IMG/VR virus record: IMGVR_UViG_3300020147_000065
Location: 124,001-188,000 of that record
DNA length: 64,000 nucleotides
Reading direction: 5' to 3' (one strand)
A model generated the notes under the pieces. The model was not told where the DNA came from and did not search any database. It saw only the letters and a program-made list of their open reading frames with translations. Numbering within the stretch: position 1 is the stretch's first letter; every line of letters starts with the position of its first letter. Positions 45,137-59,122 of the stretch are shown here, piece after piece. Position numbers and translations under genes: made by a program.

Positions 45137-45207
45137 GCGGTGGGCCTTGCCCCCCCCCCTTGTGCAGCATAGTAAATTTGTTAAAATAAATAGTGAGGTT
45201 AATCATT

Positions 45208-45432: not shown

Positions 45433-45507
45433 GGAACGGGGAGCATAAAAGCTCCCCGTTCTGCCCCCCCCCTTGTCATAAATAACATATTTGATAAAAT
45501 ATATTAC

Positions 45508-45927
45508 ATGACAATCACAAGATTTCATCGCCCACCAAACGACAAGCCACTGCTCGCAATGTTAATTGTGGTATGCTTGATTCTCGGCATTGCCATCGCC
45601 CAAGCCTCAGAGCCACAAGTAACTCAACCTCAATTCAAACAAGAGTTTCGGTTCATGCCGTGGCAAGATCAGGGCGAACGAAATGTTCAGACGCAAATAC
45701 CTCTCGCTAAATTCTTATGGGGAGAAGGCCCGACAGATCAAAACCTCGAAGATTTTGAAGATATGTGCCGACGCTTTGAGGAACCGGGCGGGTTTCAAAG
45801 TGAAGCTGAAATGGAAGCTGCCCGACGTGTTCTCGGTGTGCCGGAAGAACTTATGGATTTATACGTTGATGAAGGGTATGGAAAAGGGCACATTCCGATC
45901 AAATTACCAGCGACTCTCGATGTTTGA
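45508..45927 (+). CDS. Secreted or membrane-anchored protein
   Basis: N-terminal hydrophobic helix ending AIAQA. Confidence 0.65.
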   Translation: MTITRFHRPPNDKPLLAMLIVVCLILGIAIAQASEPQVTQPQFKQEFRFMPWQDQGERNVQTQIPLAKFLWGEGPTDQNLEDFEDMCRRFEEPGGFQSEAEMEAARRVLGVPEELMDLYVDEGYGKGHIPIKLPATLDV

Positions 45928-45978
45928 GAGTTTGCCCCCCCCTTGTTCAATAGTTTATTACGAGTTAAAATATATTAC

Positions 45979-46281
45979 ATGAAGAACGGTCATGTATATC
46001 CCGACGGTCATATTCTCATTGATGGACGGCAACACCAACTAATGCCACGCGCGGCATCTGTAGCAACCCGACTTGTGCGTGGTTTGGATAATCACACACT
46101 TGAAATTACCACCGAAGAACCATCCTCATTTGATGTGTCACTACATAAGGTTGGTGGCCAAAATTGGATTAACTATCGTAGCCCGGTTTACGGTGATATG
46201 ATGTTCTGTGACACAGGATTAATCAAGGTGTTCGGCACAATCCCTGAGAATATCTATGTGGCGGTAGTTCCTCAGCAATGA
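45979..46281 (+). CDS. Paralog family B protein, copy 2
   Basis: FCDTGLIKVFGTIPENIYV. Confidence 0.7.
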   Translation: MKNGHVYPDGHILIDGRQHQLMPRAASVATRLVRGLDNHTLEITTEEPSSFDVSLHKVGGQNWINYRSPVYGDMMFCDTGLIKVFGTIPENIYVAVVPQQ

Positions 46282-46332
46282 GGAATTGCCCCCCCCCTTG
46301 CAGCATCTATTATCTAATGTTATCCTTTAATC

Positions 46333-46887
46333 ATGGAAAAGAACGACATCCTCGATATTTACCACAAAGGCGCTGCTGTTGGTATTGCTACTCCGTTTTC
46401 TGAACTGCCATTAGGCCGATATTTTTATGATGGTGGACAGGAATATAAAAAGGTCAGCGATGACACCGCATTCGGTAATCATTCGCGTCGTTTCAATCCT
46501 TCTTATTTGGTTGTAATTACGTTGGTTACACCGCTATTTAACTTTCATGATGTGGATAAAGTTTATCTGGCGATGTGTGACCATTTCGGCGTGTTTTTCC
46601 ACAGACAGAACACCCGCGCAGACGTTGCCCGTGCCTTAATGAATTTGCCCGTGTTGGTGGTTACTGAGGTTGTAGCATGGGCAAAGATGAAATGGGCGCA
46701 AAAGATGTTCGAGGTCGAAACTCAGCGCGGCATCGGCAACCCCGAAAAGTTGGCCGAATTACAGCAGACGTGGAGTGCGCTTTATAATGCGATTGCAGCA
46801 AAGCATTATCCGGCGGGGCGTTTCTACTGGGTGGAGTGTCGCGGCGATATTCGCCGCATTGACCCTTCGCGTTACCGTTCGCGGTAA
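46333..46887 (+). CDS. Cassette gene, hypothetical (leaderless)
   Basis: TTGCAG-17-TATCCT-ATG. Confidence 0.75.
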   Translation: MEKNDILDIYHKGAAVGIATPFSELPLGRYFYDGGQEYKKVSDDTAFGNHSRRFNPSYLVVITLVTPLFNFHDVDKVYLAMCDHFGVFFHRQNTRADVARALMNLPVLVVTEVVAWAKMKWAQKMFEVETQRGIGNPEKLAELQQTWSALYNAIAAKHYPAGRFYWVECRGDIRRIDPSRYRSR

Positions 46888-46938
46888 CGCTTGCCCCCCC
46901 CCTTGTCAAAATCTATAAATGAGCGTATAATAATTATC

Positions 46939-47262
46939 ATGTTATTCTCGAAGCCAATCATTCTAACCGGACACTATAATGTGGGAGCAAAGTTCATTCG
47001 TTTAAACGGTAGAGCTTATGATTTGTTTGCTACTGCTGATTATGCAATTACAAATTTACTCCCCGCATATAAAGATGAAGCGGAAATTGCTCTTGTTCTA
47101 TCGAATAGACATATACAGGGCGGTTTAACCTTCAAACGAACCGTTGATGAGAACGGTGATATTTATTATGTCGGTTATGGTTATGAGGGGAGAGTTTGTA
47201 GACCCGCATTAAAAGAGTTATTCGGCTATCTTCCACGCCGGTTATACCTAAAGTTCATTTAG
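46939..47262 (+). CDS. Paralog family B protein, copy 3
   Basis: VCRPALKELFGYLPRRLYLKF. Confidence 0.7.
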   Translation: MLFSKPIILTGHYNVGAKFIRLNGRAYDLFATADYAITNLLPAYKDEAEIALVLSNRHIQGGLTFKRTVDENGDIYYVGYGYEGRVCRPALKELFGYLPRRLYLKFI

Positions 47263-47309
47263 GTATTGCCCCCCCCTTGTTCCCCCGTGGTTTGCTTGAT
47301 ATAATTTAA

Positions 47310-47502
47310 TTGTCAGTGAGAGAGCGCATATAGTTTGATAAAGCGTAACGTGGCTCATGGTAGGACATAGGCCCCCTGCCAGTAAGGGTTCTTCGGAATC
47401 GTATAATGAGTTCCCCCGCCTAAATGGTGTCTATTCATTTCACTGGATAGGCCCAACATGAAAGCGCAGTGGTGAGTGAAAGCATCCTTCTCTCACTGAC
47501 AA
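47310..47502 (+). ncRNA. Candidate structured non-coding RNA cassette 3
   Basis: Perfect 14-bp terminal stem TTGTCAGTGAGAGA/TCTCTCACTGACAA starting near +1 of a TTGTTC-17-TATAAT promoter; internal UUCG hairpin; no ORF. Confidence 0.7.
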
Positions 47503-47598
47503 GGTTTGGGCGTATGACCCAGTAATGAGGCGCACAGAGGCGTCTGCCCGTTGCCCCCCCCCCTTGCATTAACTAAAGAAAAGTAGGATAATAATAGT

Positions 47599-47919
47599 AT
47601 GGATAAAGTTAATGATGAACAACAACCCGCTGTTTCTATGGATTTGCAACTCGTTGCCTTCTCAAAAGACAATCAGGACGGCTCTGGCAGCGTTCACGTT
47701 TTCAACGACACCGACGAACTTCGCAAACATTTTGATGAAGTTTACGACGCCGACATTGACGAAGAGTGCGCGAAAGAAGCAGAAGAAAAGTTCAACGTTG
47801 CCATCGCAGGTTCTCAACCCTACGAAGTTGGCACGGTTGAAACGAAAACCATCAAAGTGGTAGTCGAAAACGGCAAAGTGCGACTCGCTGAGTCCCTACA
47901 CTTTAGCACCGGACAATAG
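47599..47919 (+). CDS. Acidic hypothetical protein (leaderless)
   Basis: TTGCAT-17-TATAAT then ATG. Confidence 0.7.
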   Translation: MDKVNDEQQPAVSMDLQLVAFSKDNQDGSGSVHVFNDTDELRKHFDEVYDADIDEECAKEAEEKFNVAIAGSQPYEVGTVETKTIKVVVENGKVRLAESLHFSTGQ

Positions 47920-48183
47920 TCCGGGGCTTGCCCCCCCCCTACCTTGACACCGGCTCCCTCATATGGTAGAATTTATATTAGGAGTCTCATATGTCTTTAT
48001 TTATCGTGTTATTTGGGATAGCACTACTTTTTACGATGCCGGTTTTTGTGAATCTTAAACCACTTTATTACTTCTTATGGATGGTTGAAGCGATATTGAT
48101 ATTCACAAACTAACTCGTAAGAGTTAGTGCCCCCCCCCTTGCGGCAAATATCGCAAACATATAAAATTTAATGTGGAAGTGCT

Positions 48184-48708
48184 ATGAGAAACATTGTTTT
48201 CAGAAACAGCCTCATAAGCGAGCATCGTGCAGGACAGTTGCTTCGCAGTTGGAAAAATCAGTTACGCGGCAAGTTAAGCCCTAAAAGACGTAAAGAAGTT
48301 AACGGTTTGCTTAACGATATGCGTAAAGCATTAAAGACCGTTGGCCCCTATGAGCGCGATGGTGTGTTTACTGTCGAAGAAGTTATGGCTTTAGTGGGAA
48401 CAGGCCACGGACACGTTAATCGTCGCCCTATTTCGTATGACACTAAACGTCTAAAAGTGTTCAAGCGAACGGGCACAGTATGTGTCGCGTGTGGTTTACC
48501 TGCCTCACACTTTGCTTTAGAGCGTTGCTGGGAACAAGATGGTGATTTGTGGCACTTCAATTTGTATGGTTTGAGAGACGGTAAAGAAATTCTCTTTACT
48601 CGTGACCACATTAAACCACTTGCCAGGGGTGGAACCGATTGTCTCGATAATCAGGAAACAATGTGCTGCACTTGCAATTTCAAAAAGGGCGACAAGTGGG
48701 AAGAGTGA
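48184..48708 (+). CDS. HNH endonuclease
   Basis: CVACG...TRDHIKPLARGGTDCLDNQETMCCTCNFKKG. Confidence 0.9.
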   Translation: MRNIVFRNSLISEHRAGQLLRSWKNQLRGKLSPKRRKEVNGLLNDMRKALKTVGPYERDGVFTVEEVMALVGTGHGHVNRRPISYDTKRLKVFKRTGTVCVACGLPASHFALERCWEQDGDLWHFNLYGLRDGKEILFTRDHIKPLARGGTDCLDNQETMCCTCNFKKGDKWEE

Positions 48709-48766
48709 TCTTCCCCGTCTGCCCCCCCCCTTTGCACACATAGACAATTTTAAGTATCCTTTAAGT

Positions 48767-49102
48767 ATGGAAAGAACATTTAACGTAGAACTTCAGGGAA
48801 CACTGTGGTATGTTGGTCATAATATGCTGATTCTCGAATCAGCACCGGCTCTGGATGAAATTCTGGGCGTAGAAGGAAAACGTAAACGCGTAACTGTCAG
48901 CGATAAGCATTTCAAGGGTGCGACAAACACCCTGACAACCGTGCCAAAAGCAAAGCGCAATGACACCGTGCCGGAATTCCTCGCCTATTCGTTTCGCAAG
49001 GGCACCGACAAATTCGTTTACATCTGTCCTAATGGCTTGATGTGTTACTTCCATGTGAACGAAAAGCCACCGCGCAGACTCTACATTAAAGTAGAAGATT
49101 AA
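48767..49102 (+). CDS. Paralog family B protein, copy 4 (divergent)
   Basis: ICPNGLMCYF...PPRRLYIK. Confidence 0.6.
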   Translation: MERTFNVELQGTLWYVGHNMLILESAPALDEILGVEGKRKRVTVSDKHFKGATNTLTTVPKAKRNDTVPEFLAYSFRKGTDKFVYICPNGLMCYFHVNEKPPRRLYIKVED

Positions 49103-49166
49103 CCCGAAAGGGTTAATCTTGCCCCCCCCCTTGTCAACATTTAACTTTCGCAGTAAAATCTTAACC

Positions 49167-49598
49167 ATGAACAACATGAACGACGCTCTTTGCACGGCTG
49201 CCCGAATCAATCGCACGTATGGTTTGCAAATGGTTATCTGTCCCGCCATCGGTGGACGTTTCGACGTGACACAAGGCGTCAATCCTGAAACCGGAAACCC
49301 GCTGCGTATGCTGGAAAGCGCAACACCGGCACAACTCGTTACGTGGCTTGACGGCTACGAAATGGCCCTGATTGGTGCCGAACTTCGCGCGGAAGATGCT
49401 AAGTCTTACGACTTTCCCGGCGACAAAGGAGGGTTCGACTTTTCTTTCGATGAAATTTTCGGCTCACTAATGGAGCCGCAACCCGTCGCACAAATCGAAA
49501 GTATTAGTATTGATTCCCGCATGGTTGCAGGGCCACAGGGTATCGAACGATTCACGATTATTGAGCGTGTTATTAACACGCTCTACACGATTCTCTAA
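49167..49598 (+). CDS. Cassette gene, hypothetical (leaderless)
   Basis: TTGTCA-17-TAAAAT then ATG. Confidence 0.7.
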   Translation: MNNMNDALCTAARINRTYGLQMVICPAIGGRFDVTQGVNPETGNPLRMLESATPAQLVTWLDGYEMALIGAELRAEDAKSYDFPGDKGGFDFSFDEIFGSLMEPQPVAQIESISIDSRMVAGPQGIERFTIIERVINTLYTIL

Positions 49599-49669
49599 GC
49601 GGCGGGGAGTTTCAAACTCCCCGCCTTGCCCCCCCTTGCGAGAATTAAGGAAATCGCTATACTATAACC

Positions 49670-49939
49670 ATGTCTAATCAAGAATGGCCGAAGTTTTGGC
49701 TTGAAACGAATCAGCGTTGGGGATGGGTAAGGTCGCGTGAAGAGTGGGAGGAAATGGTAAACGACACCATTCAGCCCAATTTGTGGGGATTTCGCACACG
49801 CGAAGAAATTCTCGAATACTTCCTGACCTCACGACAGCACCGGGACGGAATCGCAAACTTCGGCCAATACACCTATGCCGAGCACACCGGGGAAAAGACC
49901 TTGCGAGAGTTCTTAGCGGAGCACGGTATCGAGCCGTGA
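49670..49939 (+). CDS. Cassette gene, hypothetical (leaderless)
   Basis: TTGCGA-17-TATACT-6-ATG. Confidence 0.7.
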   Translation: MSNQEWPKFWLETNQRWGWVRSREEWEEMVNDTIQPNLWGFRTREEILEYFLTSRQHRDGIANFGQYTYAEHTGEKTLREFLAEHGIEP

Positions 49940-50220
49940 TCTGCCCCCCCCCTTGCGTCTCCTAATAGAACTTGTTAGAATGTAATTCGTTAGTTCAATC
50001 GGGAGGGCGTTATGGATTCTGCGCTTGATTATGCGATTTACTTTGCTAACCGCTATCACATGATTATGATTATCGTGTTGATTGCTGCCAACGATTATCG
50101 GGCAATACCTGAAGAGTGTAACGACTTAGGTTATCCCGTCATAGATAAGATTCTACCAAAGGATTAACAATGGCTAAAACCTTTGATTTCTTGTAGTTAC
50201 CTTAAAGGAGGTTAACTACA

Positions 50221-50436
50221 ATGAAACACAATCACAGAACTGGTGATGTAAAGCGTCAGTGCCACAGCGGATGCTATTATGGAATGAAAGATTCTCTAAA
50301 ACAGGACGAGAATTACCACCGTCGTGCAACCGAACGCCGTTTGATTTCCGACATTATGAAGGGTAAACTCGACCCTGATGAAGCCATCTTTCCTGTAAAG
50401 GGCATCCATAGTTCCGATTGGTGGGATTGGGACTAA
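50221..50436 (+). CDS. Small hypothetical protein
   Basis: AAGGAGG SD; ends SDWWDWD. Confidence 0.65.
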   Translation: MKHNHRTGDVKRQCHSGCYYGMKDSLKQDENYHRRATERRLISDIMKGKLDPDEAIFPVKGIHSSDWWDWD

Positions 50437-50525
50437 TAGATGCCCCCCCCCCTTGCTAATCAAATGACAAAAGCCTCTTCCTATGATATAATTCATCTGG
50501 AAGAGGCTTTAGTCCCGGAATTGGG

Positions 50526-51122
50526 TCATAAACTCAAGTCAAGTTTATCGTTAGCAGCCACACAATAGAATTGTGTGCCGTCAATGTTAGCAGTTCGATT
50601 AAAATGCCAATGACCAAATACCCATATTGCCGGACGGTGTATCTGTAACATGGTCATTAAAGCCAACGTGGTTTGCGTAGGCTTTACCGGCCCGTTTATC
50701 AGGCGAGGCATATTCATATGCTCGATTATACCAAACGGGGCATCGTGACTGATTACAATATCCGGCTTGGTGGCCTCATAGAGAGTAACAGCATTGGTTA
50801 AATCTTCCATGCTTAATTGCTCATCTTTCCACCAACTTATACCCTCTCTACGACGGTATTGATCTATTGACCATGCACCGGATAGAAAGAATACGCCGTG
50901 CTTGTAACCATAATCACCCAGATAAAGAGGATGGGCGCGGCACTCTTCGGGAGAATCATGATTACCACGTATGAAACCATCTATACCAGTAAAGACGGTT
51001 TCTCGATTGAAGTTACGAAAACCTAATCCCAAATCTCCCAAATGTAATGTCAAGTCTGCTTTTTCGGGATACCAAAAGCCAACCCGTTCTGCGTGAGAAT
51101 CACCAAGAAATCTATAAATCAT
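50526..51122 (-). CDS. Calcineurin-like metallophosphoesterase (inverted cassette)
   Basis: GDSH, HLGD, RGNHD, SHDAP and FGHWH motifs. Confidence 0.9.
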   Translation of the reverse strand: MIYRFLGDSHAERVGFWYPEKADLTLHLGDLGLGFRNFNRETVFTGIDGFIRGNHDSPEECRAHPLYLGDYGYKHGVFFLSGAWSIDQYRRREGISWWKDEQLSMEDLTNAVTLYEATKPDIVISHDAPFGIIEHMNMPRLINGPVKPTQTTLALMTMLQIHRPAIWVFGHWHFNRTANIDGTQFYCVAANDKLDLSL

Positions 51123-51307
51123 AAATCTACTCCTAATGTGGCTTTAACCACCATTTTGTAAATATCCATTGAGTCTAACACACCTGCCAACCAATCTACA
51201 ACCCTTTGAATGTGCTGAAACACACAAAAAGCGACATAAACCCCAACGAGTTTGTTCCTTATCCTACGTCTTAACCAACGGTAGTAAACATGGACTTTGC
51301 GACTCAT
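51119..51307 (-). CDS. Small hypothetical protein, first gene of the inverted cassette
   Basis: Minus-strand TTGCCC-17-TATACT-6-ATG. Confidence 0.65.
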   Translation of the reverse strand: MSRKVHVYYRWLRRRIRNKLVGVYVAFCVFQHIQRVVDWLAGVLDSMDIYKMVVKATLGVDL

Positions 51308-51391
51308 GCTCTAAGTATACCAAAAAGCTATCCACGGGGCAAGGTCTGCCCCCCCCTTGCATTTAGATACGATTTAGAGTATCCTTTAATC

Positions 51392-51634
51392 ATGGACGAA
51401 CTAATCAGAGATAACGGGAAGCTGCGCCCGTGTAAAGGGAATTTCCAAAAGATGACAATTCCACAAATTATCTGGGAATTTCAAATCAAGCAGGGTCAGT
51501 TCTGGGACGGTTTTACTTATGTTGATTACTGGGATATTCGTAACATTCTCTTAGTCGTCATCTTTGTTGCGCTGTTGCCCGTTTCTCTACCATTCTGCCT
51601 CTACATGAGAGCAAGGAGCCAAAAGAATTACTAA
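51392..51634 (+). CDS. Small membrane protein (leaderless)
   Basis: MDELIRDNG... with C-terminal TM segment. Confidence 0.6.
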   Translation: MDELIRDNGKLRPCKGNFQKMTIPQIIWEFQIKQGQFWDGFTYVDYWDIRNILLVVIFVALLPVSLPFCLYMRARSQKNY

Positions 51635-51816
51635 TGACACCTGAAGAACAAGACCGTTTCGCTAAGGAATGGGCTGAATACATTAAAGCTGATACTGAGT
51701 ATCAAGACCGGAAATTTAAAGCATCAATCGCCCCGCAGTGGGCGGGGCTTATCGGTTCTGTTATACTCTGTGGTGTGTTTATTTGGTTGTTTTGGTTGAC
51801 AACACCGAAAGGATAA
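51634..51816 (+). CDS. Small membrane protein
   Basis: TAATG coupling; C-terminal TM segment. Confidence 0.6.
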   Translation: MTPEEQDRFAKEWAEYIKADTEYQDRKFKASIAPQWAGLIGSVILCGVFIWLFWLTTPKG

Positions 51817-52158
51817 TATGAGCTTCCAACAAGATTTATACAACGACCAGCAGGAAATGTATCGCAGGATACATCGTGCGCGAATACACGGTTTCATTAT
51901 CGGTATAATTATAGCCGGACTAATTGTGGTTATCGTGGGTGCCCTCGTTGGCACCCACTAATGCCCCCCCCCCCTGACAAAGTAAATAATTATTTGTATA
52001 ATAAAGATATGACAAAGAGAAGATTAGGGTTAATTATCACACTTTTGATATTGTGGATTATTGTCGGAATAAGCATTTTCTTATATCGGCAAAGTATGGG
52101 TATCCCTGTTTAATGCCCCCCCTTGTAGCAAAGTAAGAACTTTGTTACAATTTATTAT

Positions 52159-52314
52159 ATGAAAAGAAAAGGTTTTACCGTCATCGAACTGCTTGTCGTA
52201 ATTGCTATCTGCGCGATTCTCATTTCTGTCATCGTTACCGGCGTTCAACGTGCGCGTGGTGGAGCAACCCAAAGCCAGGAGCGCGTAGTCCCCCGTTTTC
52301 AGCCTCAACGCTGA
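52159..52314 (+). CDS. 51-aa type IV prepilin-like peptide (not in ORF track)
   Basis: MKRKG^[28 protein letters not shown]: basic leader, G(-1) F(+1) E(+5), hydrophobic helix. Confidence 0.85.
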
Positions 52315-52373
52315 GCGGCGGGGCTTGCCCCCCCCCCTTGCTCCCTTACTAACTAATTCGTTATAATCTTAGT

Positions 52374-52757
52374 ATGTCACGATACAAGAAGTCAATGGGA
52401 ACATGGAAAGAGATTTGTATTTGTATTAGAGGCGCATTTATCAATTTTGACGTTGTGCAAGCCACGGGACAAGTCTTTGATTTGTATTGTGATATTCATA
52501 CTCACGTTGACGCTTACAGTGAAAAAATCGAGGGTGAAAAAGAACTGAACTGGAAAGTGGGTAAGAACTCATTATTCAAACACTGTCCAAAGAAGAAAAT
52601 AGCGAAACACATCAAACGACTCTTTGAGTCCGATGATATTATGCTGTTTCCTTATCTCGATACAGATGATAAAGAAGCAGTTAAAGATGCAGCAGAAGAT
52701 AGACAATTTCTCGAAAAGATGGCTCAGTTCTACGGGATTACACTCCCGGAGGACTGA
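52374..52757 (+). CDS. Cassette gene, hypothetical (leaderless)
   Basis: TATAAT-6-ATG. Confidence 0.7.
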   Translation: MSRYKKSMGTWKEICICIRGAFINFDVVQATGQVFDLYCDIHTHVDAYSEKIEGEKELNWKVGKNSLFKHCPKKKIAKHIKRLFESDDIMLFPYLDTDDKEAVKDAAEDRQFLEKMAQFYGITLPED

Positions 52758-52805
52758 TATGCCCCCCCCTTGCCCGTGGTTTGCTTTTTAGTTAGAATGT
52801 ATTAC

Positions 52806-53123
52806 ATGAAATTAGATATTAACAAAGCGTTTATTTTGGTAACAGTCATTACCGAAAAGGGTAATTCTATTACCCTGCCGTGTCGCAAATATAGTTTCAG
52901 CAAACGAAACGGCGAATCTGAACTGAATTTGAATAGTGCGATGGATGACGGTGTGACGCCATGTGAAGGCGTTAAAGAATATTACCGCAAAAATCCCACT
53001 GCTCCAGTCGGCACCGAAGTTCTTTTGAATATGTTGCTCGCGGAAGGTATTGCGTTGGTTTACAATACCGCGACGCTCATGTATAACGAACAAGGCGAGT
53101 TGTTCATTCCTGAGGAGGAATGA
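52806..53123 (+). CDS. Cassette gene, hypothetical (leaderless)
   Basis: TTGCCC-17-TAGAAT then ATG. Confidence 0.7.
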   Translation: MKLDINKAFILVTVITEKGNSITLPCRKYSFSKRNGESELNLNSAMDDGVTPCEGVKEYYRKNPTAPVGTEVLLNMLLAEGIALVYNTATLMYNEQGELFIPEEE

Positions 53124-53172
53124 GCCTTGCCCCCCCCTTGACTAATCCCCGTGGTGAGTTAAAATGTATTAC

Positions 53173-53331
53173 ATGAAAAAGAGCAAATCCAAACCTGAAC
53201 ACATGACGGTTGCCAACGCAGTTAAGGTCACAATGCCGCGTCAACACTGCCCAACGCGCACAATCGAACCTAAGCGTAACAAGTTGCGCGACAAGGTTTC
53301 CAAACGCGAATTTAAACGGGGTGATTATTGA
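53173..53331 (+). CDS. 52-aa very basic peptide (not in ORF track)
   Basis: MKKSKSKPEH...PTRTIEPKRNKLRDKVSKREFKRGDY, leaderless. Confidence 0.6.
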   Translation: MKKSKSKPEHMTVANAVKVTMPRQHCPTRTIEPKRNKLRDKVSKREFKRGDY

Positions 53332-53525
53332 TGTTTGAAAAACTCATCGCCTTCGTTCTCGGTCTGGTGTGCTTAACATGCGCTTTTACAGTTATGACTA
53401 TGTTTGTTAGCATAATCTGTAATCTCGGTTGGGATTGGCAACACGTTATGCGAACTTGGTTCTGGATTTTTATCGTTCTCGAAGTTCTGTTTTGGATTGG
53501 TGGCGGCCTTAGTCAATTCGACTAA
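53328..53525 (+). CDS. Two-TM membrane protein
   Basis: Two hydrophobic helices; overlaps the upstream stop. Confidence 0.6.
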   Translation: MMFEKLIAFVLGLVCLTCAFTVMTMFVSIICNLGWDWQHVMRTWFWIFIVLEVLFWIGGGLSQFD

Positions 53526-53541
53526 GGTTTGCCCCCCCACC

Positions 53542-53781
53542 TCAGGGATAGGCCAGTGCCGGCGCTCCCTGAGTAAAGTAACGGAGTTTCTCTATTCCTT
53601 CAAACCTTACTTCCAATACTTCTGCACCACTTTTACCGTCTTTACCGTATCGCTTGACAGAAACAATCTCGCCTGGTGTGTTTTCAGGGACTTCTACCGT
53701 CTTCATATCGAGTCCCAATAACTCCATGCGAGCAACGATCTTATCACCCTGTTTGAAATTAACGTCCTCTGTAAATTGCAT
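53542..53781 (-). CDS. SH3-like small protein in an inverted cassette
   Basis: Minus-strand TTGACT-CCCCGTGG spacer-TATACT-6-ATG (MQFTEDVNFKQGDKIV). Confidence 0.7.
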   Translation of the reverse strand: MQFTEDVNFKQGDKIVARMELLGLDMKTVEVPENTPGEIVSVKRYGKDGKSGAEVLEVRFEGIEKLRYFTQGAPALAYP

Positions 53782-53867
53782 GATATTAGTATATAGCCAA
53801 CCACGGGGGTTAGTCAATGCCCCCCCCCCCATTGCACACTCTAAACAATAGCGGTAAAATATATTCC

Positions 53868-54290
53868 ATGAGCAAAACAAAAGTAACCCCGAACAGCGTA
53901 GCATTCAGCGCGTTGCAGGAAGTTGTCAAAGTTGGTAACACGAAACTGAAAGTTCTTTTCGTTGCCGAACGCGGCGTCCACGGTGCCGAAACCTACTGGA
54001 ACGACGAAATGCGCGGCAATGTCGGCAAAGAACTGACCGTGAGAGATTCCGACGCGAGCAGCAACGAATTTCAGCTTTCCGACGATTTCTGGTATCCTGC
54101 AATCTCCTTGTTTGCTGAACCCAAACAGCCGGTAGAAGTGTCGCTGCCTGATTACACGGCGACGGTGTATCCTACCCATCTCCAAGTTGGTTATCAGGAA
54201 ATCACCAAAGAAATGGTTCTGGCAATCGTCAAGGGTGGACTGGATACGGGCTTCCTCTCCACATCAGATTTGGAGGGTCTGAATAAATAA
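53868..54290 (+). CDS. Paralog family C protein, copy 1
   Basis: GxHG...W...M...G...WYPAxxL and LPDYTA...VGxQxxTKEMxLxIV...GF motifs. Confidence 0.85.
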   Translation: MSKTKVTPNSVAFSALQEVVKVGNTKLKVLFVAERGVHGAETYWNDEMRGNVGKELTVRDSDASSNEFQLSDDFWYPAISLFAEPKQPVEVSLPDYTATVYPTHLQVGYQEITKEMVLAIVKGGLDTGFLSTSDLEGLNK

Positions 54291-54375
54291 GCCCCGGCTC
54301 CCTTCGGGGAGCTTTGCCCCCCCTTGCGCACAGCTCTAATCTTCTGTATAATTATTAGTAATAAGGAGGCCAACG

Positions 54376-54645
54376 ATGCCTAAATCAATGTTTCGTCCAT
54401 CGGATGTAATGGACAACGCGCATTTCAATGACCACACTAAGGTCTTGACTGTGACGTTTCAGAGTGGTTCGGTTTACGAGTATGAGAATGTGCCTGAGCG
54501 CGTTTTCAATCGTTTAAACGCCGCTCCTTCTAAGGGACAGTTCTTTAATCAGAACATCCGTAATAAATACGCATTTAAGTGTGTGTTTAAACCCGCTAAG
54601 ACAACTACAGCGCCGCAGGTTCAGCCCGTGGCTGTCACTGTCTAA
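54376..54645 (+). CDS. KTSC domain protein
   Basis: LTVTFQSGSVYEYENVPERVFNRLNAAPSKGQFFNQNIRNKY; AAGGAGG SD. Confidence 0.9.
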   Translation: MPKSMFRPSDVMDNAHFNDHTKVLTVTFQSGSVYEYENVPERVFNRLNAAPSKGQFFNQNIRNKYAFKCVFKPAKTTTAPQVQPVAVTV

Positions 54646-54742
54646 TGTTCCTCCTTACCGGGAAACGGAGGCTTCCGGGCCTCCGTTTCTTCGGTCTGCC
54701 CCCCCCTTGTCACAAGTAAATTAAAACGATATAATCTATTAC

Positions 54743-55159
54743 ATGAGTGAAACAAACAACGTGAACATTGCTGAACTGAGCCTGAACCAAATTGCATTCT
54801 TAAAGCTCGGCCTCAAAGAAGGCGACACCGTAAAGGTTGTTGCTAAAGTGCCAGAAGGCACACACGGTTCTGATATTTACTGGGAAACGAGTATGACCCG
54901 TAAAATCGGTAAAACCCAACGAGTAGTAGGTGCGCGGAACCATAGCCGAATCGAACTCGAAGATGGGTATTACTACCCTGCCCTCGCGCTGGAAAAAGTG
55001 AAAGTTGTCAAGGAAATTCGGCTCCCTGACTACACCGCTTTAGTCAGCGAAGATGGTGTATCCGTGGGTTGCCAAAACCTCACCAAAGAAATGGTGTTGG
55101 GTATCGTAAAAGCCGCAGTGGAAACGAACTTCATTTCACAGGAGGACTTGGAGTTCTAA
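54743..55159 (+). CDS. Paralog family C protein, copy 2
   Basis: Family C motifs. Confidence 0.85.
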   Translation: MSETNNVNIAELSLNQIAFLKLGLKEGDTVKVVAKVPEGTHGSDIYWETSMTRKIGKTQRVVGARNHSRIELEDGYYYPALALEKVKVVKEIRLPDYTALVSEDGVSVGCQNLTKEMVLGIVKAAVETNFISQEDLEF

Positions 55160-55233
55160 GCCGGGAGCCGTCGAAAGACGGCGACCTGCCCCCCCCCTTG
55201 TCACTACTCAAGAATAACAGTAAAATATATTCC

Positions 55234-55653
55234 ATGAGTGATAAAGTAAAGACAATGAATGATGTGGCTTTCGAGTTTCTCAATGAGAAATTCAAAGTTG
55301 GCGACAAAGTGCGAGTCACCATGCGGGTTGACTCTGGTGTGCAGGGTAATCGAATTGACTGGCTTGAGGGAATGGAAGAGGCTCTCAATTCGGGACTTCA
55401 CACTATTCTGGATACCAACGAGTCGTATGGTGCGTTCCGACTGAGTTGTGGTTACTGGTTCCCGGCGTTGGCAATCAGCTCTGATGTTGGTAAAGTCACT
55501 GTCAAACTGCCCGACTACACAGCCGAAATCACCAAAGAAAAAGTCAACGTAGGTTGTCAAGTTCTGACAAAAGAGATGATTCTCAGTATCGTAAAGGCCG
55601 CAGTGGACACCGGCTTTTTAAATGAGGAGGATATTGCCTCACTTAAAGGTTAA
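55234..55653 (+). CDS. Paralog family C protein, copy 3
   Basis: Family C motifs; leaderless MSDKVK. Confidence 0.85.
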   Translation: MSDKVKTMNDVAFEFLNEKFKVGDKVRVTMRVDSGVQGNRIDWLEGMEEALNSGLHTILDTNESYGAFRLSCGYWFPALAISSDVGKVTVKLPDYTAEITKEKVNVGCQVLTKEMILSIVKAAVDTGFLNEEDIASLKG

Positions 55654-55732
55654 GCGGCGGGGAGCTGCCTTCAGGCAGCGACCTCTTGCCCCCCCCTTGC
55701 ACTAACCAACTAAAAACGATAGAATATATTCC

Positions 55733-56158
55733 ATGAGTGATACAACAGCAAAGACGGTTAATGATGCAGCGTTTGAGATTCTCAGCGCAACGGTCAAAGA
55801 AGGCAGCAAGGTTCGCGTAATTCTTCGTATCCCAAAAGGTATGCATGGAAGCCGCATCTCATGGGTTGACTCGATGGACGGAAACGTGGGCGTCGGTATC
55901 CACACTGTAACCGATGTAAGCCCTCGCTACGGTGCTTTCGAGTTGGACAACGAAAAGTGGTATCCTGCGGTTGCTCTTTCGGCGGACGCGGAAACCGTTC
56001 GCGTCGCGCTCCCTGACTACGAAGCAGAAATTACCAAAGATGGTATCGTAGTCGCGGGGCAGAACCTCACCAAAGAGATGGTTCTCGGCATCGTGCAGGG
56101 TGCGCTCGACACCGGATTCCTTGATAAAGGAGATGTAGCCACTATTAAGACTTCCTAA
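55733..56158 (+). CDS. Paralog family C protein, copy 4
   Basis: Family C motifs. Confidence 0.85.
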   Translation: MSDTTAKTVNDAAFEILSATVKEGSKVRVILRIPKGMHGSRISWVDSMDGNVGVGIHTVTDVSPRYGAFELDNEKWYPAVALSADAETVRVALPDYEAEITKDGIVVAGQNLTKEMVLGIVQGALDTGFLDKGDVATIKTS

Positions 56159-56238
56159 GCAACGGGGAGCCATCCACGGGTGGCGACCTTTTGCCCCCCC
56201 CCTTGCACCAAAATAAGATAAGCGGTATAATTTATTAC

Positions 56239-56676
56239 ATGAGCGATACACAAACAACCCCCGAACTGACCGTGAACCAAGCCGCATTTAATGTTTTAAA
56301 TGCGAAAGTGACCGAAGGCGACAAGATTCGCGTCGTCCTCAAAGTGCCTATTACCGTGCATGGTAGTGATGTGAACTGGGTCGAAGAGATGGACAACACC
56401 ATCAACAAAACGCTTCGCGTTCGCCGCGTTGACGCAAGCAATGGTTCTTTCTATCTCAGCAACGGCTACTGGTATCCTGCCGTGGCACTCTCCACCGAAG
56501 TAGCAAAAATCACCGTGCCGCTGCCGGATTACACGGCGGAAATCACCAAAGAACAGGTCAACGTCGGCTGCCAGATTTTGACCAAAGAAATGATTCTCGG
56601 CATCGTGCAAGGCGCGTTGGATGTAGGGTTTCTGAGCGAAGAGGATGTGAACCGCCTCGACACCAGAGAAGTATAA
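56239..56676 (+). CDS. Paralog family C protein, copy 5
   Basis: Family C motifs; leaderless MSDTQT. Confidence 0.85.
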   Translation: MSDTQTTPELTVNQAAFNVLNAKVTEGDKIRVVLKVPITVHGSDVNWVEEMDNTINKTLRVRRVDASNGSFYLSNGYWYPAVALSTEVAKITVPLPDYTAEITKEQVNVGCQILTKEMILGIVQGALDVGFLSEEDVNRLDTREV

Positions 56677-56750
56677 CCGGGTGGACTCTTCGGAGTCCAC
56701 CCTGCCCCCCCCCCTTGCGCTGATAGAATTTAAACAGTATAATTTATTCC

Positions 56751-57167
56751 ATGAGTGAAACAAGAAAGACGGTTAATGACGCGGCGTTTGAAATCCTCAA
56801 CGCACAGTTGAACATTGGTGATAGAGTTCGTATTGTCGCCAAAATTGATGAGGGTGTCCACGGCAGCAAGACTGTTTGGACATCTCGCATGAATGATAGT
56901 GTGGGTCAGTTTATGACTATTCGCGGTGTTGAACCTGAGTATGGTGCTTTTCAGTTGGATAACTATTACTGGTATCCTGCCGTGGCACTCGATACTCAGG
57001 TGCATAAAGTGACGGTTAATCTGCCGGATTATTGCGCTGAAATCACCAAAGAAGGGGTGAACGTGGGTTGTCAGAACCTCACCAAAGAAATGATTCTGCA
57101 AATCGTGCAGGGCGCGTTAGACGTGGGTTTTCTCGATGCCGAGGACATCGAAAGTCTGAAAGTATAA
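56751..57167 (+). CDS. Paralog family C protein, copy 6
   Basis: Family C motifs. Confidence 0.85.
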   Translation: MSETRKTVNDAAFEILNAQLNIGDRVRIVAKIDEGVHGSKTVWTSRMNDSVGQFMTIRGVEPEYGAFQLDNYYWYPAVALDTQVHKVTVNLPDYCAEITKEGVNVGCQNLTKEMILQIVQGALDVGFLDAEDIESLKV

Positions 57168-57244
57168 GCGGCGGGGAGCTATCGAAAGATAGCGACCTTG
57201 CCCCCCCCTTGGCAACACTCAATATAAACAGTAAAATATAAGAC

Positions 57245-57643
57245 ATGAACATGAACCAAGCAGCATTCGAGACGTTGAAGGAAACGCGCGGCATCGGTGA
57301 CAAAGTGAAGGTTGTCCTGCAAGTGGACAAAGGTGTGCATGGAAACCTCTTCCGTTGGGATTCCGGTATGACCGAACAAATCGGAAAAGTCTTGACAATC
57401 AAAGAGTTCGATTCTTCGGACAACACCATCCTGCTGTCAGATAGCCGTTATTATCCCGCACTCGCTTTGATGAGCGACAACGGCCCCATTATCGTGGAAT
57501 TGCCCGATTACAAGGCAGAAATCCACGCTGACCGTGTGCAAGTTGGTTGTCAGTGCCTCACCAAACAGATGGTGTTGGACATCGTGAAGGGTGCAGTATC
57601 TGTCGGGTTTATGAGCGAATCAGATTTGGAGGGTCTGCGATAA
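57245..57643 (+). CDS. Paralog family C protein, copy 7
   Basis: Family C motifs. Confidence 0.85.
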   Translation: MNMNQAAFETLKETRGIGDKVKVVLQVDKGVHGNLFRWDSGMTEQIGKVLTIKEFDSSDNTILLSDSRYYPALALMSDNGPIIVELPDYKAEIHADRVQVGCQCLTKQMVLDIVKGAVSVGFMSESDLEGLR

Positions 57644-57720
57644 GCCCCCGCGGACTCTTCGGAGTCCGCCTTGCCCCCCCCCCTTGCACAAGGTTCAAAT
57701 TAAGGGGTATAATTTATTCC

Positions 57721-58137
57721 ATGAGCAAACAAAAGACGTTACACGACATTGCATTTGAAGAACTGGGCATCGAAGAGGGCGACTTCGCTAAAGTCGTCCT
57801 TAAAGTGGACGAAGACGTTCACGGTAACCCGCTCCGTTGGTCGCATGGTATGGAAGAAATGTTAGGTAAGACATTTCGCGTCACCAACATTGATACCAGC
57901 GACAACACAATCGAACTGAACAACGGCGAATGGTTCTCGGCTATTTCGCTCGAAAAGGCAACCGGCGAAATCAAGGTGCAATTACCGGATTACACCGCAG
58001 TCGTAACCAAAGAAGGCATGGAAGTTGGTTGCCAGAAACTCGACAAAGACAAGGTTTTGGAAATCGTTCAGGCTGCAATCACCACCGGTATGATTGACCG
58101 CGATGATGTCGAAGACCTCGACTATCACGACGACTAA
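57721..58137 (+). CDS. Paralog family C protein, copy 8
   Basis: Family C motifs; leaderless MSKQKT. Confidence 0.85.
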   Translation: MSKQKTLHDIAFEELGIEEGDFAKVVLKVDEDVHGNPLRWSHGMEEMLGKTFRVTNIDTSDNTIELNNGEWFSAISLEKATGEIKVQLPDYTAVVTKEGMEVGCQKLDKDKVLEIVQAAITTGMIDRDDVEDLDYHDD

Positions 58138-58212
58138 GCGGGGTGCTGCCTTCGGGCAGCACTCTTGCCCCCCCCCCTTGCCTTGTCCCCGTGGTTGGGT
58201 TATCCTTTACAT

Positions 58213-58506
58213 ATGTCCGACGAATATCCTTTAACAGTTAAACAAGTAAACAAACTCATGGATGATGTTTTCAATACTGAGCCGCCAGAGCTTGTTCTTG
58301 CTCGTAAACTTAAAGAAGCCGGTTTTACTGAGCATCAAGTATGGAGAATGTTTATTGCTCGTAATGATGAGCCGAAACCTTATGCCCCACACTTTGCAAG
58401 CTATATAAGTTCAAATGAAGCAATTCGTTTGAGAGTTTATAATTTTTTTCGTGACTTCGAACGTGGTGGAGTGTGTCGGCGGATAGATACCGGATTAATC
58501 AGTTAA
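58213..58506 (+). CDS. Cassette gene, hypothetical (leaderless)
   Basis: TTGCCT-CCCCGTGG spacer-TATCCT then ATG. Confidence 0.65.
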   Translation: MSDEYPLTVKQVNKLMDDVFNTEPPELVLARKLKEAGFTEHQVWRMFIARNDEPKPYAPHFASYISSNEAIRLRVYNFFRDFERGGVCRRIDTGLIS

Positions 58507-58559
58507 TCCGGTTGCCCCCCCCCCTTGCATCGGTTAAATCTCTGAGTTATCCTTTATAT

Positions 58560-59069: not shown

Positions 59070-59122
59070 GGCGATTGCCCCCCCCCTTGGCAACTCATGA
59101 AAAAGGGAGTAAAATATTTAAC

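What the first reader, a model, noticed from the sequence alone, without database searches (positions are those of the whole stretch)
50442..53831. Payloads can be inverted while the flanking C-runs keep their strand
Seen: the gene at 53781-53542 has its own minus-strand leaderless promoter (TTGACT...TATACT), and the 51307-50526 operon has TTGCCC-17-TATACT. Both lie between C-runs still on the + strand (53531/53819 and 50442/51348), and neither inverted promoter has a C-run 5' of its -35 on its own strand. Several runs (31924, 33735, 34029, 35130, 53531) are followed by A, not TTG. Inference: the C-run is not needed for promoter function and is a strand-polarised chromosomal site.
Basis: partly seen in the sequence, partly recalled or inferred. 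Interest (0 to 1): 0.82.

Follow-up and report, generated by a model that had tools for sequence, protein, structure and literature searches.

The report
Poly-C box in phage cassette boundaries
In a 221-kb soil phage, about a hundred short runs of C lie between one small gene's hairpin and the next gene's promoter; they are an oriented part of a repeated boundary element at which gene cassettes are gained, lost or sit inverted, not a chromosome-wide polar signal.

Summary
Two minus-strand modules (50526-51307 and 53542-53781) have their own leaderless promoters and lie between plus-strand C-runs. Some runs have no promoter next to them.

The inference holds only in part. The unit is hairpin, TG, C7-11, TTGCnn(-35), 17 nt, TAnAAT, 6-7 nt, ATG. 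I held 117 kb of the 221-kb contig and found 98 runs. TG precedes 95 of them, TTG follows 77 directly, and 80% follow a strong hairpin.

Run strand follows transcription. Three complete units lie on the minus strand inside a minus-strand gene block just beyond the window, and polarity switches at least four times along the contig. That excludes a replication- or chromosome-type polar site.

C-less promoters do exist, but they are a different class (TTGACA). The inverted modules use a third class, with CCCCGTGG in the spacer.

A 3-kb contig from a related phage, syntenic at 65-77% identity, carries TGCCCCRCCCTTG at the same boundaries. It keeps the phosphoesterase module inverted. It lacks the 79-aa inverted module and two other cassettes, and each indel ends at a boundary element.

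Best reading: a PeSL-like composite terminator/promoter boundary with a new C-rich box. What the box does biochemically is unproven.

The parts
31925..63401 (+). Array of 71 TG-C(7-11) elements. Most sit in the unit hairpin / TG / C-run / TTGCnn / 17 nt / TAnAAT / 6-7 nt / ATG. It continues beyond the window to contig 195.8 kb and resumes at 206.8-221.1 kb and 0-3.8 kb.
50443..50452 (+). C10 run at the left boundary of inverted module A. TTGCTA follows but no -10 at promoter spacing. The related phage has TGCCCCGCCC-TTGACA here; this phage has a 12-nt insertion that splits the -35.
50470..50510 (.). Bidirectional hairpin (12-bp stem) shared by the + gene ending at 50436 and the minus operon ending at 50526. 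Its loop holds the -10 of a + strand promoter-like site (ATGACA 50464, 17 nt, TATAAT 50492) that is conserved in the relative.
50526..51122 (-). Inverted module A, gene 2: metallophosphoesterase, 198 aa.
   Evidence: Pfam PF00149 at 3e-7 and phrog_1649 at 2e-25; called on this strand in two other assemblies
51119..51307 (-). Inverted module A, gene 1: 62-aa ORF with no family match and a leaderless start.
51314..51342 (-). Promoter of module A: TTGCCC, 17 nt, TATACT, with CCCCGTGG in the spacer. Its -35 lies 6 nt from the G-side of run 51349.
51349..51391 (+). C8 run plus resident + promoter (TTGCAT, 17 nt, TATCCT, 6 nt, ATG at 51392), back to back with the minus promoter. There is no upstream hairpin.
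53507..53538 (+). Hairpin 53507-53527, TTTG, then orphan C7 run 53532-53538 followed by A. It sits at a convergent junction with no + promoter.
53542..53781 (-). Inverted module B: 79-aa ORF with no family match. It is absent from the related phage.
53788..53817 (-). Promoter of module B: TTGACT, 18 nt, TATACT, 6 nt, ATG, with CCCCGTGG in the spacer. Its -35 lies 2 nt from the G-side of run 53820.
53820..53867 (+). C11 run, A, then resident + promoter (TTGCAC, 17 nt, TAAAAT, 7 nt, ATG at 53868). This is the first unit of the 8-paralog array.
30131..30850 (-). Three TG-Cn elements on the minus strand (30131-30137, 30513-30520, 30840-30850). The last two follow the terminator hairpins of + strand genes, so they are on the 'wrong' strand. 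None has a promoter.
52328..52805 (+). One complete cassette: C10 run, promoter, 127-aa ORF, C8 run 52762 and the next promoter. In the relative the stretch from the 127-aa ORF's ATG (52374) to just before the next ATG (52805) is missing as a unit. The relative's promoter is like that of 52328 and its ORF is like the one at 52806.
61676..61700 (-). A further minus-strand promoter-like site (CTGCCCCGTGGTTAGCATACT) that abuts the G-side of run 61705. No convincing minus gene follows it.

Best explanation
The C-run is the core (TG-C7-11, a 'C-box') of a repeated composite boundary element. The element reads: RNA hairpin of the upstream gene, TG, C-box, a sigma70/sigmaA-type promoter with a weak -35 (TTGC..) and a TAnAAT -10, then a leaderless ATG 6-7 nt downstream. 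At least 90 such boundaries punctuate the small, mostly ORFan gene cassettes of this 221-kb soil phage. Leaderless genes need their own 5' end, which explains why each cassette carries its own promoter (inference).

The box belongs to the promoter side of the boundary and is oriented with transcription. It most probably serves as an upstream recognition or regulatory site at -36 to -46 for RNA polymerase or a phage factor. That factor would mark this promoter class and allow it to be controlled as a block (inference). The repeated boundaries are also where cassettes are gained and lost, by recombination between neighbouring copies (shown by comparison with a relative).

The two minus-strand payloads are self-contained modules. 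Each has its own promoter of a different class and shares a hairpin with its convergent neighbour. They sit between two resident + boundaries, so the flanking runs belong to the neighbours and the module has none of its own.
For: Shown. (1) Anatomy of 98 runs in 117 kb: TG precedes 95, TTG follows with zero spacing in 77, and 71 have a full -35/-10/start. The spacer is 17 nt in 55/68, the leader is 6-7 nt in 57/68, and the start is ATG in 61/68.
(2) A hairpin of dG <= -12 lies in the 50 nt upstream of 80% of runs, against 20% of random 50-mers (p = 5e-33). It ends 0-4 nt from the run in 76/86. UUCG or GNRA loops occur in 25/86, which points to RNA-level hairpins.
(3) Orientation follows transcription. 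Three full units lie on the minus strand in a minus-strand gene block. Among + genes, 69 have a same-strand run upstream and 1 an opposite-strand run; among - genes the split is 4 to 4 (Fisher p = 2e-4).
(4) Run-bearing promoters form a distinct class. The fourth -35 base is A in 4/68, against 26/36 in run-less promoters (p = 2e-12). Run-less promoters have AT-rich upstream DNA and no hairpin enrichment.
(5) At an orthologous promoter (RuvB-like gene, 61% aa identity), the relative has C>=10 abutting TTGCAC. This phage has the run displaced by 11 nt and a consensus TTGACA.
(6) Selection on the box. Eight tandem paralogs share only 36-45% aa identity, yet each keeps hairpin, TG-Cn and promoter while hairpin and spacer sequences differ.
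(7) Related contig L156/L160 is 65-77% nt identical to window 49968-54654. It has 7 boxes, all TGCCCCRCCCTTG-like, all on one strand and at the same boundaries. The phosphoesterase module is inverted there too. Three cassettes are present here and absent there, with end-points at the elements and a hybrid promoter at one junction.
(8) A third inverted module (52-aa membrane ORF, window-like 67104-67262) shows the same arrangement.
Against: No experiment or transcript map exists. No RNA run was found, and only assembled contigs could be laid. No binding factor has been identified. Twelve orphan runs have no promoter. Three of these (30513, 30840 and contig ~7.6 kb) lie on the strand opposite to the gene whose hairpin they follow, and neither a promoter role nor a terminator role explains that. 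TG is conserved better than the downstream TTG, and hairpin coupling is nearly as tight as promoter coupling, so the box could belong to the 3' end of the upstream unit instead. The comparative evidence rests on one 3-kb contig and one 1-kb contig. About 47% of the genome was not read. The host is unknown, and the two hints disagree: the capsid protein's only, distant matches (24-26%) are actinophages, while the terminase is 40% identical to one in an Armatimonadetes prophage.
Confidence: 0.6

Rival explanations
1. The C-run is a strand-polarised chromosomal site (of the Chi, KOPS, primase-site or nick-site type). Its orientation is set by the chromosome, not by transcription, and it has no role in promoters.
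For: Single inverted genes at 50526-51307, 53542-53781 and 67104-67262 lie between + runs. Three runs sit on the strand opposite to the gene they follow: 30513, 30840 and contig ~7.6 kb. The - to + switch at about 31.4 kb coincides with a palindrome and repeat region.
Against: Polarity switches at least four times along the contig: - at 154 kb, + at 156-196 kb, - at 197-200 kb, + at 207-221 and 0-4 kb, - at 7.6 kb. The 196/197 kb switch coincides with a switch in gene strand, and the runs there carry full minus-strand promoters. There are no runs in 37 kb of structural genes. TTG follows with zero spacing in 77/98. Run-bearing promoters have their own -35 class.
Confidence: 0.05
2. An RNA-level 3' element. 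The run is transcribed behind the hairpin of the upstream gene. As a C-rich unstructured tail it loads Rho or another factor, so read-through transcripts are stopped before they cover the next cassette. Because the next cassette is leaderless, it would be untranslatable from a read-through transcript. Transcripts started at the next promoter lack the run and escape.
For: The hairpin ends 0-4 nt before the run in 76/86 cases, and the hairpins lack U-tracts; the terminator scan shows no enrichment, 6 found against 5.1 expected. Every + orphan except 50443 follows a hairpin. Three orphans sit exactly at convergent junctions, where blocking antisense read-through makes sense: 50443, 53532 and 71770. 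Poly(C) is the classic best ligand of Rho (textbook knowledge).
Against: Rigid zero spacing to the -35 and the -35 class difference are not expected of an RNA element. Nine runs have a promoter but no upstream hairpin, among them 51349 and 53820. A run of 7-11 nt is far shorter than known rut sites. The minus-strand modules and the last gene of the minus block have no C-run on their own RNA. Three sites would place a G-run in the RNA.
Confidence: 0.2
3. The run has no function in expression. It persists because the 12-17 nt identical stretch TG-Cn-TTGC is the microhomology at which cassettes duplicate and recombine, so it spreads together with the cassettes.
For: There are tandem paralog arrays. 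Cassette indels against the relative end at the elements. Both runs that flank inverted module B are followed by A, which looks like a duplicated junction.
Against: The run is retained in 8/8 boundaries of paralogs that have diverged to 36-45% aa identity, while neighbouring spacer and hairpin sequences have randomised. At orthologous sites the relative has a fixed, purine-interrupted CCCCRCCC, which points to sequence-specific selection. The one resolvable crossover lies at the promoter/ATG, not in the box.
Confidence: 0.1
4. A contingency tract. The homopolymer slips during replication, and its length tunes or switches each early promoter, giving population-level variation in about 90 accessory genes.
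For: Lengths differ between sites (7-11). A second soil sample holding the same phage shows no substitutions, but +1 C at both runs it covers. The duplicated contig end reads C10 in one copy and C11 in the other.
Against: Three assemblies agree on 44 of 45 run lengths. The discrepancies come with a compensating 1-nt deletion about 10 nt downstream, which looks technical. The second sample has only 2-4x depth. The run lies upstream of the -35, where length does not change promoter geometry. The relative uses an interrupted box of fixed length that does not slip.
Confidence: 0.05

Closest known systems
PeSL (promoter-early stem-loop) cassettes of T4-like phages (Arbiol et al. 2010, PMC2839356; Comeau et al. 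2014, PMC4122927)
   Same: Small composite terminator/promoter motifs are repeated between small ORFan genes in plastic early regions. They combine a strong sigma70-like promoter with a stem-loop. Indels between related phages end at the motifs, which fits recombination between copies.
   Different: [quoted passage not shown] The hairpins vary in sequence and are not the conserved GGGG...CCCC stem. The genes are leaderless. The phage lineage is unrelated. Minicircles and direct recombination were not observed.
Operator/stoperator sites of cluster A mycobacteriophages (L5 gp71; PMC9283540 and work cited there)
   Same: Many copies of one asymmetric short site occur both at promoters and in short intergenic spaces without a promoter. 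Orientation correlates with the direction of transcription.
   Different: No repressor is known here. The site is a C-run of variable length rather than a fixed 13-mer. Most copies are at promoters rather than between genes. There is no sign that the phage is temperate.
UP element / upstream extension of the -35 (general bacterial promoter knowledge)
   Same: It occupies about -36 to -46, directly upstream of the -35. It accompanies a weaker -35 hexamer, as a compensating element would.
   Different: UP elements are A/T-rich and bind the alpha C-terminal domain. This element is pure C on the non-template strand and has a conserved TG at its far edge.
Phase-variable homopolymeric promoter tracts (e.g. 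the Bordetella fim C-stretch, Neisseria porA/opc; recalled knowledge)
   Same: A homopolymeric C/G tract inside a promoter region, with lengths that differ between copies.
   Different: Those tracts lie where their length sets the spacing between -35 and -10, or between an activator site and -10. This one is upstream of the -35, and heterogeneity within the population was not demonstrated.
Polar chromosomal motifs (Chi, KOPS; recalled knowledge)
   Same: A short asymmetric motif with a strong strand bias over tens of kilobases.
   Different: Those motifs follow replication arms and occur inside genes throughout the genome. This one follows local transcription, lies only between genes, and is confined to the cassette regions.

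Membership tests
PeSL-type composite promoter/terminator cassette | A sigma70-like -35/-10 promoter adjacent to a stable stem-loop in short intergenic regions | tested here: met
   71/98 runs have a full promoter. 80% have a hairpin of dG <= -12 upstream, against 20% of random 50-mers.
PeSL-type composite promoter/terminator cassette | An AT-rich (UP-like) region upstream of the -35 | tested here: not met
   TG-C7-11 takes its place. The AT-rich upstream region is seen only at the run-less promoters.
PeSL-type composite promoter/terminator cassette | A relatively conserved stem-loop sequence (GGGG...CCCC) | tested here: not met
   Stems differ in sequence and show compensatory changes. The loops are often UUCG or GNRA.
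PeSL-type composite promoter/terminator cassette | Flanks small ORFan genes clustered in plastic regions | tested here: met
   Cassettes average 430 bp, and most products have no Pfam hit. The paralog family has no homologue among 5.8 billion proteins.
PeSL-type composite promoter/terminator cassette | Indels and replacements between related phages end in the motifs, through recombination between copies | tested here: met
   Compared with L156/L160, three cassettes differ and their end-points lie at the elements. One junction carries a hybrid promoter. This rests on a single 3-kb relative.
PeSL-type composite promoter/terminator cassette | Excised cassette circles; promoter and terminator activity shown by reporters | not testable with these tools
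   Laying contigs showed no joints at the runs. Contigs drop rare forms, so this proves nothing.
Stoperator/operator system | Many copies of one asymmetric site, at promoters and in promoter-less intergenic spaces | tested here: met
   About 86 runs are at promoters and 12 are orphans.
Stoperator/operator system | Site orientation correlates with the direction of transcription | tested here: met
   For 73 of the 78 genes with a run within 130 nt upstream, the run is on the gene's own strand (69 of 70 + genes, 4 of 8 - genes), Fisher p = 2e-4. Exceptions are the runs at 30513 and 30840, the one at contig ~7.6 kb, and the flanks of the inverted modules.
Stoperator/operator system | A cognate phage repressor that binds the site and blocks initiation and elongation | not tested
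   No DNA-binding candidate was found among the Pfam hits listed for about 60 neighbouring genes. Half the genome was not read.
Polar chromosomal motif (Chi/KOPS-like) | Orientation set by replication arm or chromosome, independent of the strand of local genes | tested here: not met
   There are at least four polarity switches. Those at about 196 and 201-206 kb coincide with switches in gene strand.
Polar chromosomal motif (Chi/KOPS-like) | Distributed genome-wide, including within genes | tested here: not met
   There are none in window 1-30 kb or in the 7.6 kb to its left. All runs are intergenic.
Phase-variable promoter tract | Tract length heterogeneous within a population | tested here: inconclusive
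   44/45 lengths are identical in three assemblies of one sample. There is +1 C at 2 of 2 runs in a second sample at 2-4x depth. No raw reads were available.
Phase-variable promoter tract | The tract sits where its length changes the spacing of promoter elements | tested here: not met
   The run lies upstream of the -35. The -35/-10 spacer is 17 nt whatever the run length.
Rho-utilisation (rut) site | About 60-80 nt of C-rich, G-poor unstructured RNA upstream of the termination zone | tested here: not met
   The run is only 7-11 nt, with a hairpin on one side and promoter sequence on the other. Function was not testable.

The most novel reading that the evidence does not exclude
TG-C-box is the recognition site of a dedicated, still unidentified factor. 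Candidates are a phage protein or an unusual determinant of the host polymerase. The factor would switch about 90 leaderless single-gene cassettes on or off as one regulon. With the hairpin, the box would form a self-contained 'cassette grammar' by which accessory genes, each with its own promoter, are captured, lost or flipped: a promoter-bearing phage counterpart of integron cassettes. The box co-evolves between relatives, as a pure C-run of variable length here and as a fixed CCCCRCCC there.
Probability: 0.25. Interest if true: 0.8.

Novelty: new variant of a known kind. Interest (0 to 1): 0.6.

Why it matters
Phage accessory and anti-defence genes sit in fast-changing regions full of ORFans, and how those regions are expressed and reshuffled is understood for only a few model phages. 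This is a non-T4 lineage with a very regular solution: each tiny leaderless gene gets its own hairpin, C-box and promoter. Comparison with a relative shows the same boundaries used as indel end-points. A C-rich tract abutting the -35 of about 80 promoters has, as far as I could find, no described counterpart. If it is a factor-binding site, it gives a simple handle on early-gene control in an uncultured jumbo phage and a new promoter element to test. There is also a practical point. Low-coverage assemblies of such phages break at the runs, so relatives are fragmented and easy to miss.

Tried and rejected
- **Close relatives by DNA.** Megablast against GenBank phages found nothing useful.
- **First pattern scan.** The first architecture pattern used the wrong -35/-10 gap, counted from TTG instead of from the end of the hexamer, so it was too insensitive. 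I corrected it.
- **Corrected pattern (8 or more C).** Scans of IMG/VR, JGI metagenomes and GTDB genomes gave several matches only on the phage's own contig. The other hits were about 8, 65 and 51 singletons, which is chance level. I concluded at first that there were no relatives. That was wrong: relatives exist, but one has an interrupted box and the other sits in fragmentary Logan/NCBI contigs that these collections do not hold.
- **Interrupted-box pattern in IMG/VR.** This found only an unrelated repeat.
- **Replication-polarity idea** (origin near 31.4 kb). Rejected because of the number and positions of the polarity switches.
- **C-run as substitute for a terminator U-tract.** Rejected. 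An rC:dG hybrid is stable, and elsewhere in the genome the runs follow canonical hairpin plus U-tract terminators at a distance.
- **Retro-copy tail, integron attC and lambda cII-box (TTGC-N6-TTGC) analogies.** Considered and dropped. The polarity, the RNA-type tetraloops and the variable spacing do not fit.
- **Rfam.** No family matched anywhere in the window.
- **Hypervariability.** Comparing assemblies suggests that most length differences are technical.
- **Host.** The hints are weak and conflict.
- **Relative with 65% identical RuvB-like protein.** Its contig has no DNA on hand.

Full report
**Source**

The window is positions 124,001-188,000 (same strand) of a 221,108-bp contig, IMGVR_UViG_3300020147_000065 = Ga0196976_1000013, from a soil metagenome. 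The contig ends overlap, so the genome is circular or permuted.

Window 1-27 kb is a minus-strand structural module. It includes the capsid protein, a portal-size ORF and a terminase carrying a LAGLIDADG intein. From about 30 kb onward the window holds small genes.

Nothing similar exists in GenBank phages at the DNA level. By stitching loci I held 117.4 kb of the contig: 116.4-213.2 kb continuing to 221.1 kb, and 0-13.0 kb.

**Observation**

Every item in the finding is present; the observation check gives the coordinates.

- TGCCCCCCC occurs 71 times in the window, against 0.44 expected.
- There are 71 runs of 7 or more C on + between 31925 and 63401. Three lie on - at 30131, 30513 and 30840. 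There are none in 1-30 kb.
- The two minus-strand modules and their promoters are confirmed by reading the sequence, by the consensus scan and by independent gene calls on two other assemblies.
- The 198-aa product is a metallophosphoesterase. The 62-aa and 79-aa products match no family.

**Anatomy of the element**

Figures are for the 98 runs in the held sequence: 91 on +, 7 on -; lengths 7 to 11 occur 7, 23, 31, 33 and 4 times.

- TG precedes 95 runs, and the two positions before the run are T in 95 and G in 97. This is the best-conserved feature.
- TTG follows immediately in 77.
- 71 runs have a complete TTGnnn / 16-18 nt / TAnnnT / 4-9 nt / start codon. Of the 68 where the run abuts the TTG, the spacer is 17 nt in 55, the gap to the start is 6-7 nt in 57, and the start is ATG in 61. 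These genes are therefore leaderless or nearly so.
- The 50 nt upstream folds to dG <= -12 in 80% of cases, against 20% of random 50-mers (p = 5e-33). The hairpin ends 0-4 nt from the run in 76 of 86. Loops are UUCG in 13 and GNRA in 12 of 86, which is typical of RNA hairpins.
- The hairpins carry no U-tract. The terminator scan shows no enrichment.

**Three promoter flavours**

- Run-bearing promoters have a degenerate -35 (TTGC/T..). A is the fourth base in only 4/68.
- About 36 equally high-scoring promoters without a run are mostly ccTTGACA / 17 nt / TAtAAT, with A in 26/36 (p = 2e-12). They have AT-rich upstream DNA and no excess of hairpins.
- A third group carries CCCCGTGG(T/A)T in the spacer, with or without a run. 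All the minus-strand promoters discussed here belong to it: 51338, 53807, 61697, 30103 and 29809.

Promoters without a run therefore exist, but the run-bearing ones are not the same promoter with an optional extra.

**Strand test**

Just beyond the window, at window-like 72.2-77 kb (contig 196-201 kb), the genes turn to the minus strand. The three runs there, at 73133, 73871 and 76052, are on the minus strand too. Each reads TG-C9/10-TTGC...TAtAAT...ATG.

In the gene-centred table, + genes have a same-strand run upstream 69 times and an opposite one once. For - genes the counts are 4 and 4 (Fisher p = 2e-4).

Polarity along the contig runs -, +, -, +, -, and two of the switches coincide with switches in gene strand.

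**What the simple promoter reading does not explain**

Twelve runs have no promoter.

- Those at 50443, 53532 and 71770 lie at convergent junctions, behind the last + gene.
- Several in 31.9-35.2 kb follow hairpins and are themselves followed by AC.
- At 30513, 30840 and contig ~7.6 kb, a + gene's hairpin is followed by a G-run and then CA, so the element lies on the opposite strand.
- Nine runs have a promoter but no hairpin, including 51349 and 53820. Those two are preceded by the divergent minus promoters instead.

TG-Cn is therefore a module of its own, usually sandwiched between hairpin and promoter. Its junction with the -35 is the more rigid one: zero spacing, against 0-4 nt on the hairpin side.

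**Inverted modules**

There are three, not two. A 52-aa membrane ORF at window-like 67104-67262 has the same layout.

In each case the minus promoter sits 2-6 nt from the G-side of the next + run, back to back with the resident + promoter. The minus gene ends at a hairpin shared with the convergent + gene. The intergenic space is fully used, 85 nt for two promoters plus the run, so this abutment may be no more than tight packing.

**Conservation within the phage**

Eight tandem paralogs (53868-58137) are only 36-45% identical in protein and have no homologue outside this phage. All eight boundaries keep hairpin, TG-C8-11 and promoter, while the stems and spacers differ. The run is therefore under selection or constantly renewed, and is not just recent copying.

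**Relatives**

- **L154.** This is a 1,081-bp Logan contig encoding a RuvB-like protein, 61% identical in both aa and nt. It starts with at least 10 C, then TTGCAC / 18 nt / TAAAAT / 10 nt / ATG. This phage's orthologous promoter is TG-C11 / 11 nt / TTGACA / 17 nt / TAAAAT / 10 nt / ATG. The run is conserved at the same place, and the copy whose run does not abut the -35 has the consensus -35.
- **L156 (= L160 reversed).** This is a 3,037-bp contig from NCBI assembly GCA_040384025.1, with GC 45%. It is collinear with window 49968-54654 at 65-77% identity.
  - It has seven boundary elements, all on the strand of the majority genes. Each reads (T)G-CCCC(A/G)CCC-TT(G/C), a fixed 8-nt box interrupted by a purine.
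  - The phosphoesterase (59% aa) and the small ORF in front of it are inverted there as well, between two same-strand boxes.
  - It lacks the 127-aa cassette (52374-52805), the inverted 79-aa module and the first 140-aa paralog (53532-54316). It also lacks two or three small genes around 51.4-52.1 kb.
  - At the first of these indels, its promoter resembles the one at 52328 up to the ATG, while its ORF is the homologue of 52806 (alignment A2). That is what recombination between two neighbouring boundaries would produce.
  - At 50443 this phage has a 12-nt insertion that splits a TTGACA which is intact in the relative (A3).
- **L151.** This is a 150-kb JGI contig whose terminase is 50% identical, with GC 39%. 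It has isolated C13/C14 runs linked to hairpins on both strands next to the structural module. Its phosphoesterase homologue (43%) is co-oriented with its neighbours.

**Length stability**

Three assemblies of the source sample agree on 44 of 45 run lengths. The few differences pair a +1 C in the run with a 1-nt deletion about 10 nt downstream, which looks like homopolymer error. A second soil sample holds the same phage at 2-4x with no substitutions, but with +1 C at both runs it covers, and its contigs break near the runs. No inversion or excision joints were seen, but only contigs could be laid. Hypervariability is therefore unproven, and the relative's interrupted box argues that slippage is not the point.

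**Interpretation**

The run is the C-rich core of a composite boundary. Its architecture and evolutionary behaviour are closest to the PeSL elements of T4-like phages (PMC2839356, PMC4122927). Its copy distribution and orientation rule resemble the operator/stoperator sites of cluster A mycobacteriophages (PMC9283540).

It differs from both in the element itself. I found no description of a C-tract abutting the -35 in phage promoters; those literature searches were limited.

Four points favour a DNA-level role on the promoter side, as a recognition or regulatory site: the rigid junction with the -35, the distinct -35 class, the orthologous-promoter comparison, and the sequence-specific box in the relative. 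An RNA-level insulator role (Rho loading behind the hairpin) remains a serious rival, because of the orphans at convergent junctions. The mirrored orphans remain unexplained under every model.

**Limits**

- Gene calls are from a crude caller of my own, cross-checked against pipeline calls only for 40.5-61 kb and 66-86 kb.
- 47% of the genome was not read. The promoter-linked pattern, which hits about 30% of units, has no match there.
- The comparative evidence is one 3-kb contig and one 1-kb contig.
- There are no RNA data, and the host is unknown.

Noticed in passing
window, about 20 sites, e.g. 36748, 42725, 53148, 58188 (+); 51338, 53807, 61697, 30103, 29809 (-): The motif CCCCGTGG(T/A)T(T/G)G lies 4-5 nt upstream of the -10 in a subset of promoters on both strands, with or without a C-run. 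It looks like a second regulon or operator. All the inverted-module promoters carry it.
   Followed up: partly
window 50464-50492 (+), inside hairpin 50470-50510: A + strand promoter-like site (ATGACA, 17 nt, TG-n-TATAAT, 11/12 match) has its -10 in the loop of the bidirectional hairpin and points antisense into the phosphoesterase operon. It is conserved in the relative as TTGACA, 18 nt, TATAAT. It may be an antisense promoter or a relic of the resident boundary.
   Followed up: partly
window 53868-58137 (+): A tandem array of eight paralogous genes of about 140 aa (36-45% identity), each with its own boundary. The family has no homologue outside this phage among 5.8 billion proteins.
   Followed up: yes
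window 41786-42056 and 47306-47550 (+): Two units with a C-run and promoter but no ORF on the + strand. Both start TTAATTGT(G/C)AG. The second has a long closing stem (z = -2.2) and the first does not (z = +1.4). No Rfam match. They may be small RNAs. A pipeline calls a 64-aa minus ORF at 41685-41879 instead.
   Followed up: partly
window 52159-52314 (+): A 51-aa ORF with a prepilin-type N-terminal methylation motif (Pfam N_methyl; [17 protein letters not shown]...). It is conserved in the related contig. Other organisms in the sample carry similar N-termini.
   Followed up: no
window 22183-24930 (-): The terminase large subunit is interrupted by a LAGLIDADG intein. The closest relative's terminase (50% identity, 1261 aa) appears to carry more intein sequence. 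Its nearest match in a cellular genome (40%) is in a prophage of Armatimonadetes bacterium Uphvl-Ar1.
   Followed up: partly
window about 31430-31600: A perfect palindrome of about 40 nt (ggcctacttgtcaag...cttgacaagtaggc) lies with several GTCAAG/TTGACA repeats in a gene-free stretch, exactly where run polarity changes from - to +. It could be a regulatory or origin-like region.
   Followed up: no
window 33132, 34059 (+) and 31491 (-): Three CTG-CCCACCCCC sites: interrupted boxes with the TG prefix and no adjoining promoter. They resemble the relative's CCCCRCCC box.
   Followed up: no
window 52328/52343, 57674, 60556: Alternative assemblies of the same sample give the run one extra C and drop one base about 10 nt downstream. 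Low-coverage contigs end at runs. These are homopolymer artefacts that fragment assemblies of this phage type.
   Followed up: yes
window 48184-48708 (+); L017:5742-6470 (-): HNH and GIY-YIG homing-endonuclease genes are embedded among the cassettes. The GIY-YIG gene is on the strand opposite to its neighbours.
   Followed up: no
L152 (JGI Ga0485239_004151): An unrelated AT-rich phage fragment (GC 28%; RuvB-like 37% identical) shows the classical version of the architecture. Each small gene is preceded by an AT-rich repeat (aataatttaaaataatt) plus TTGACA, which puts AT-rich DNA where this phage has the C-box.
   Followed up: no
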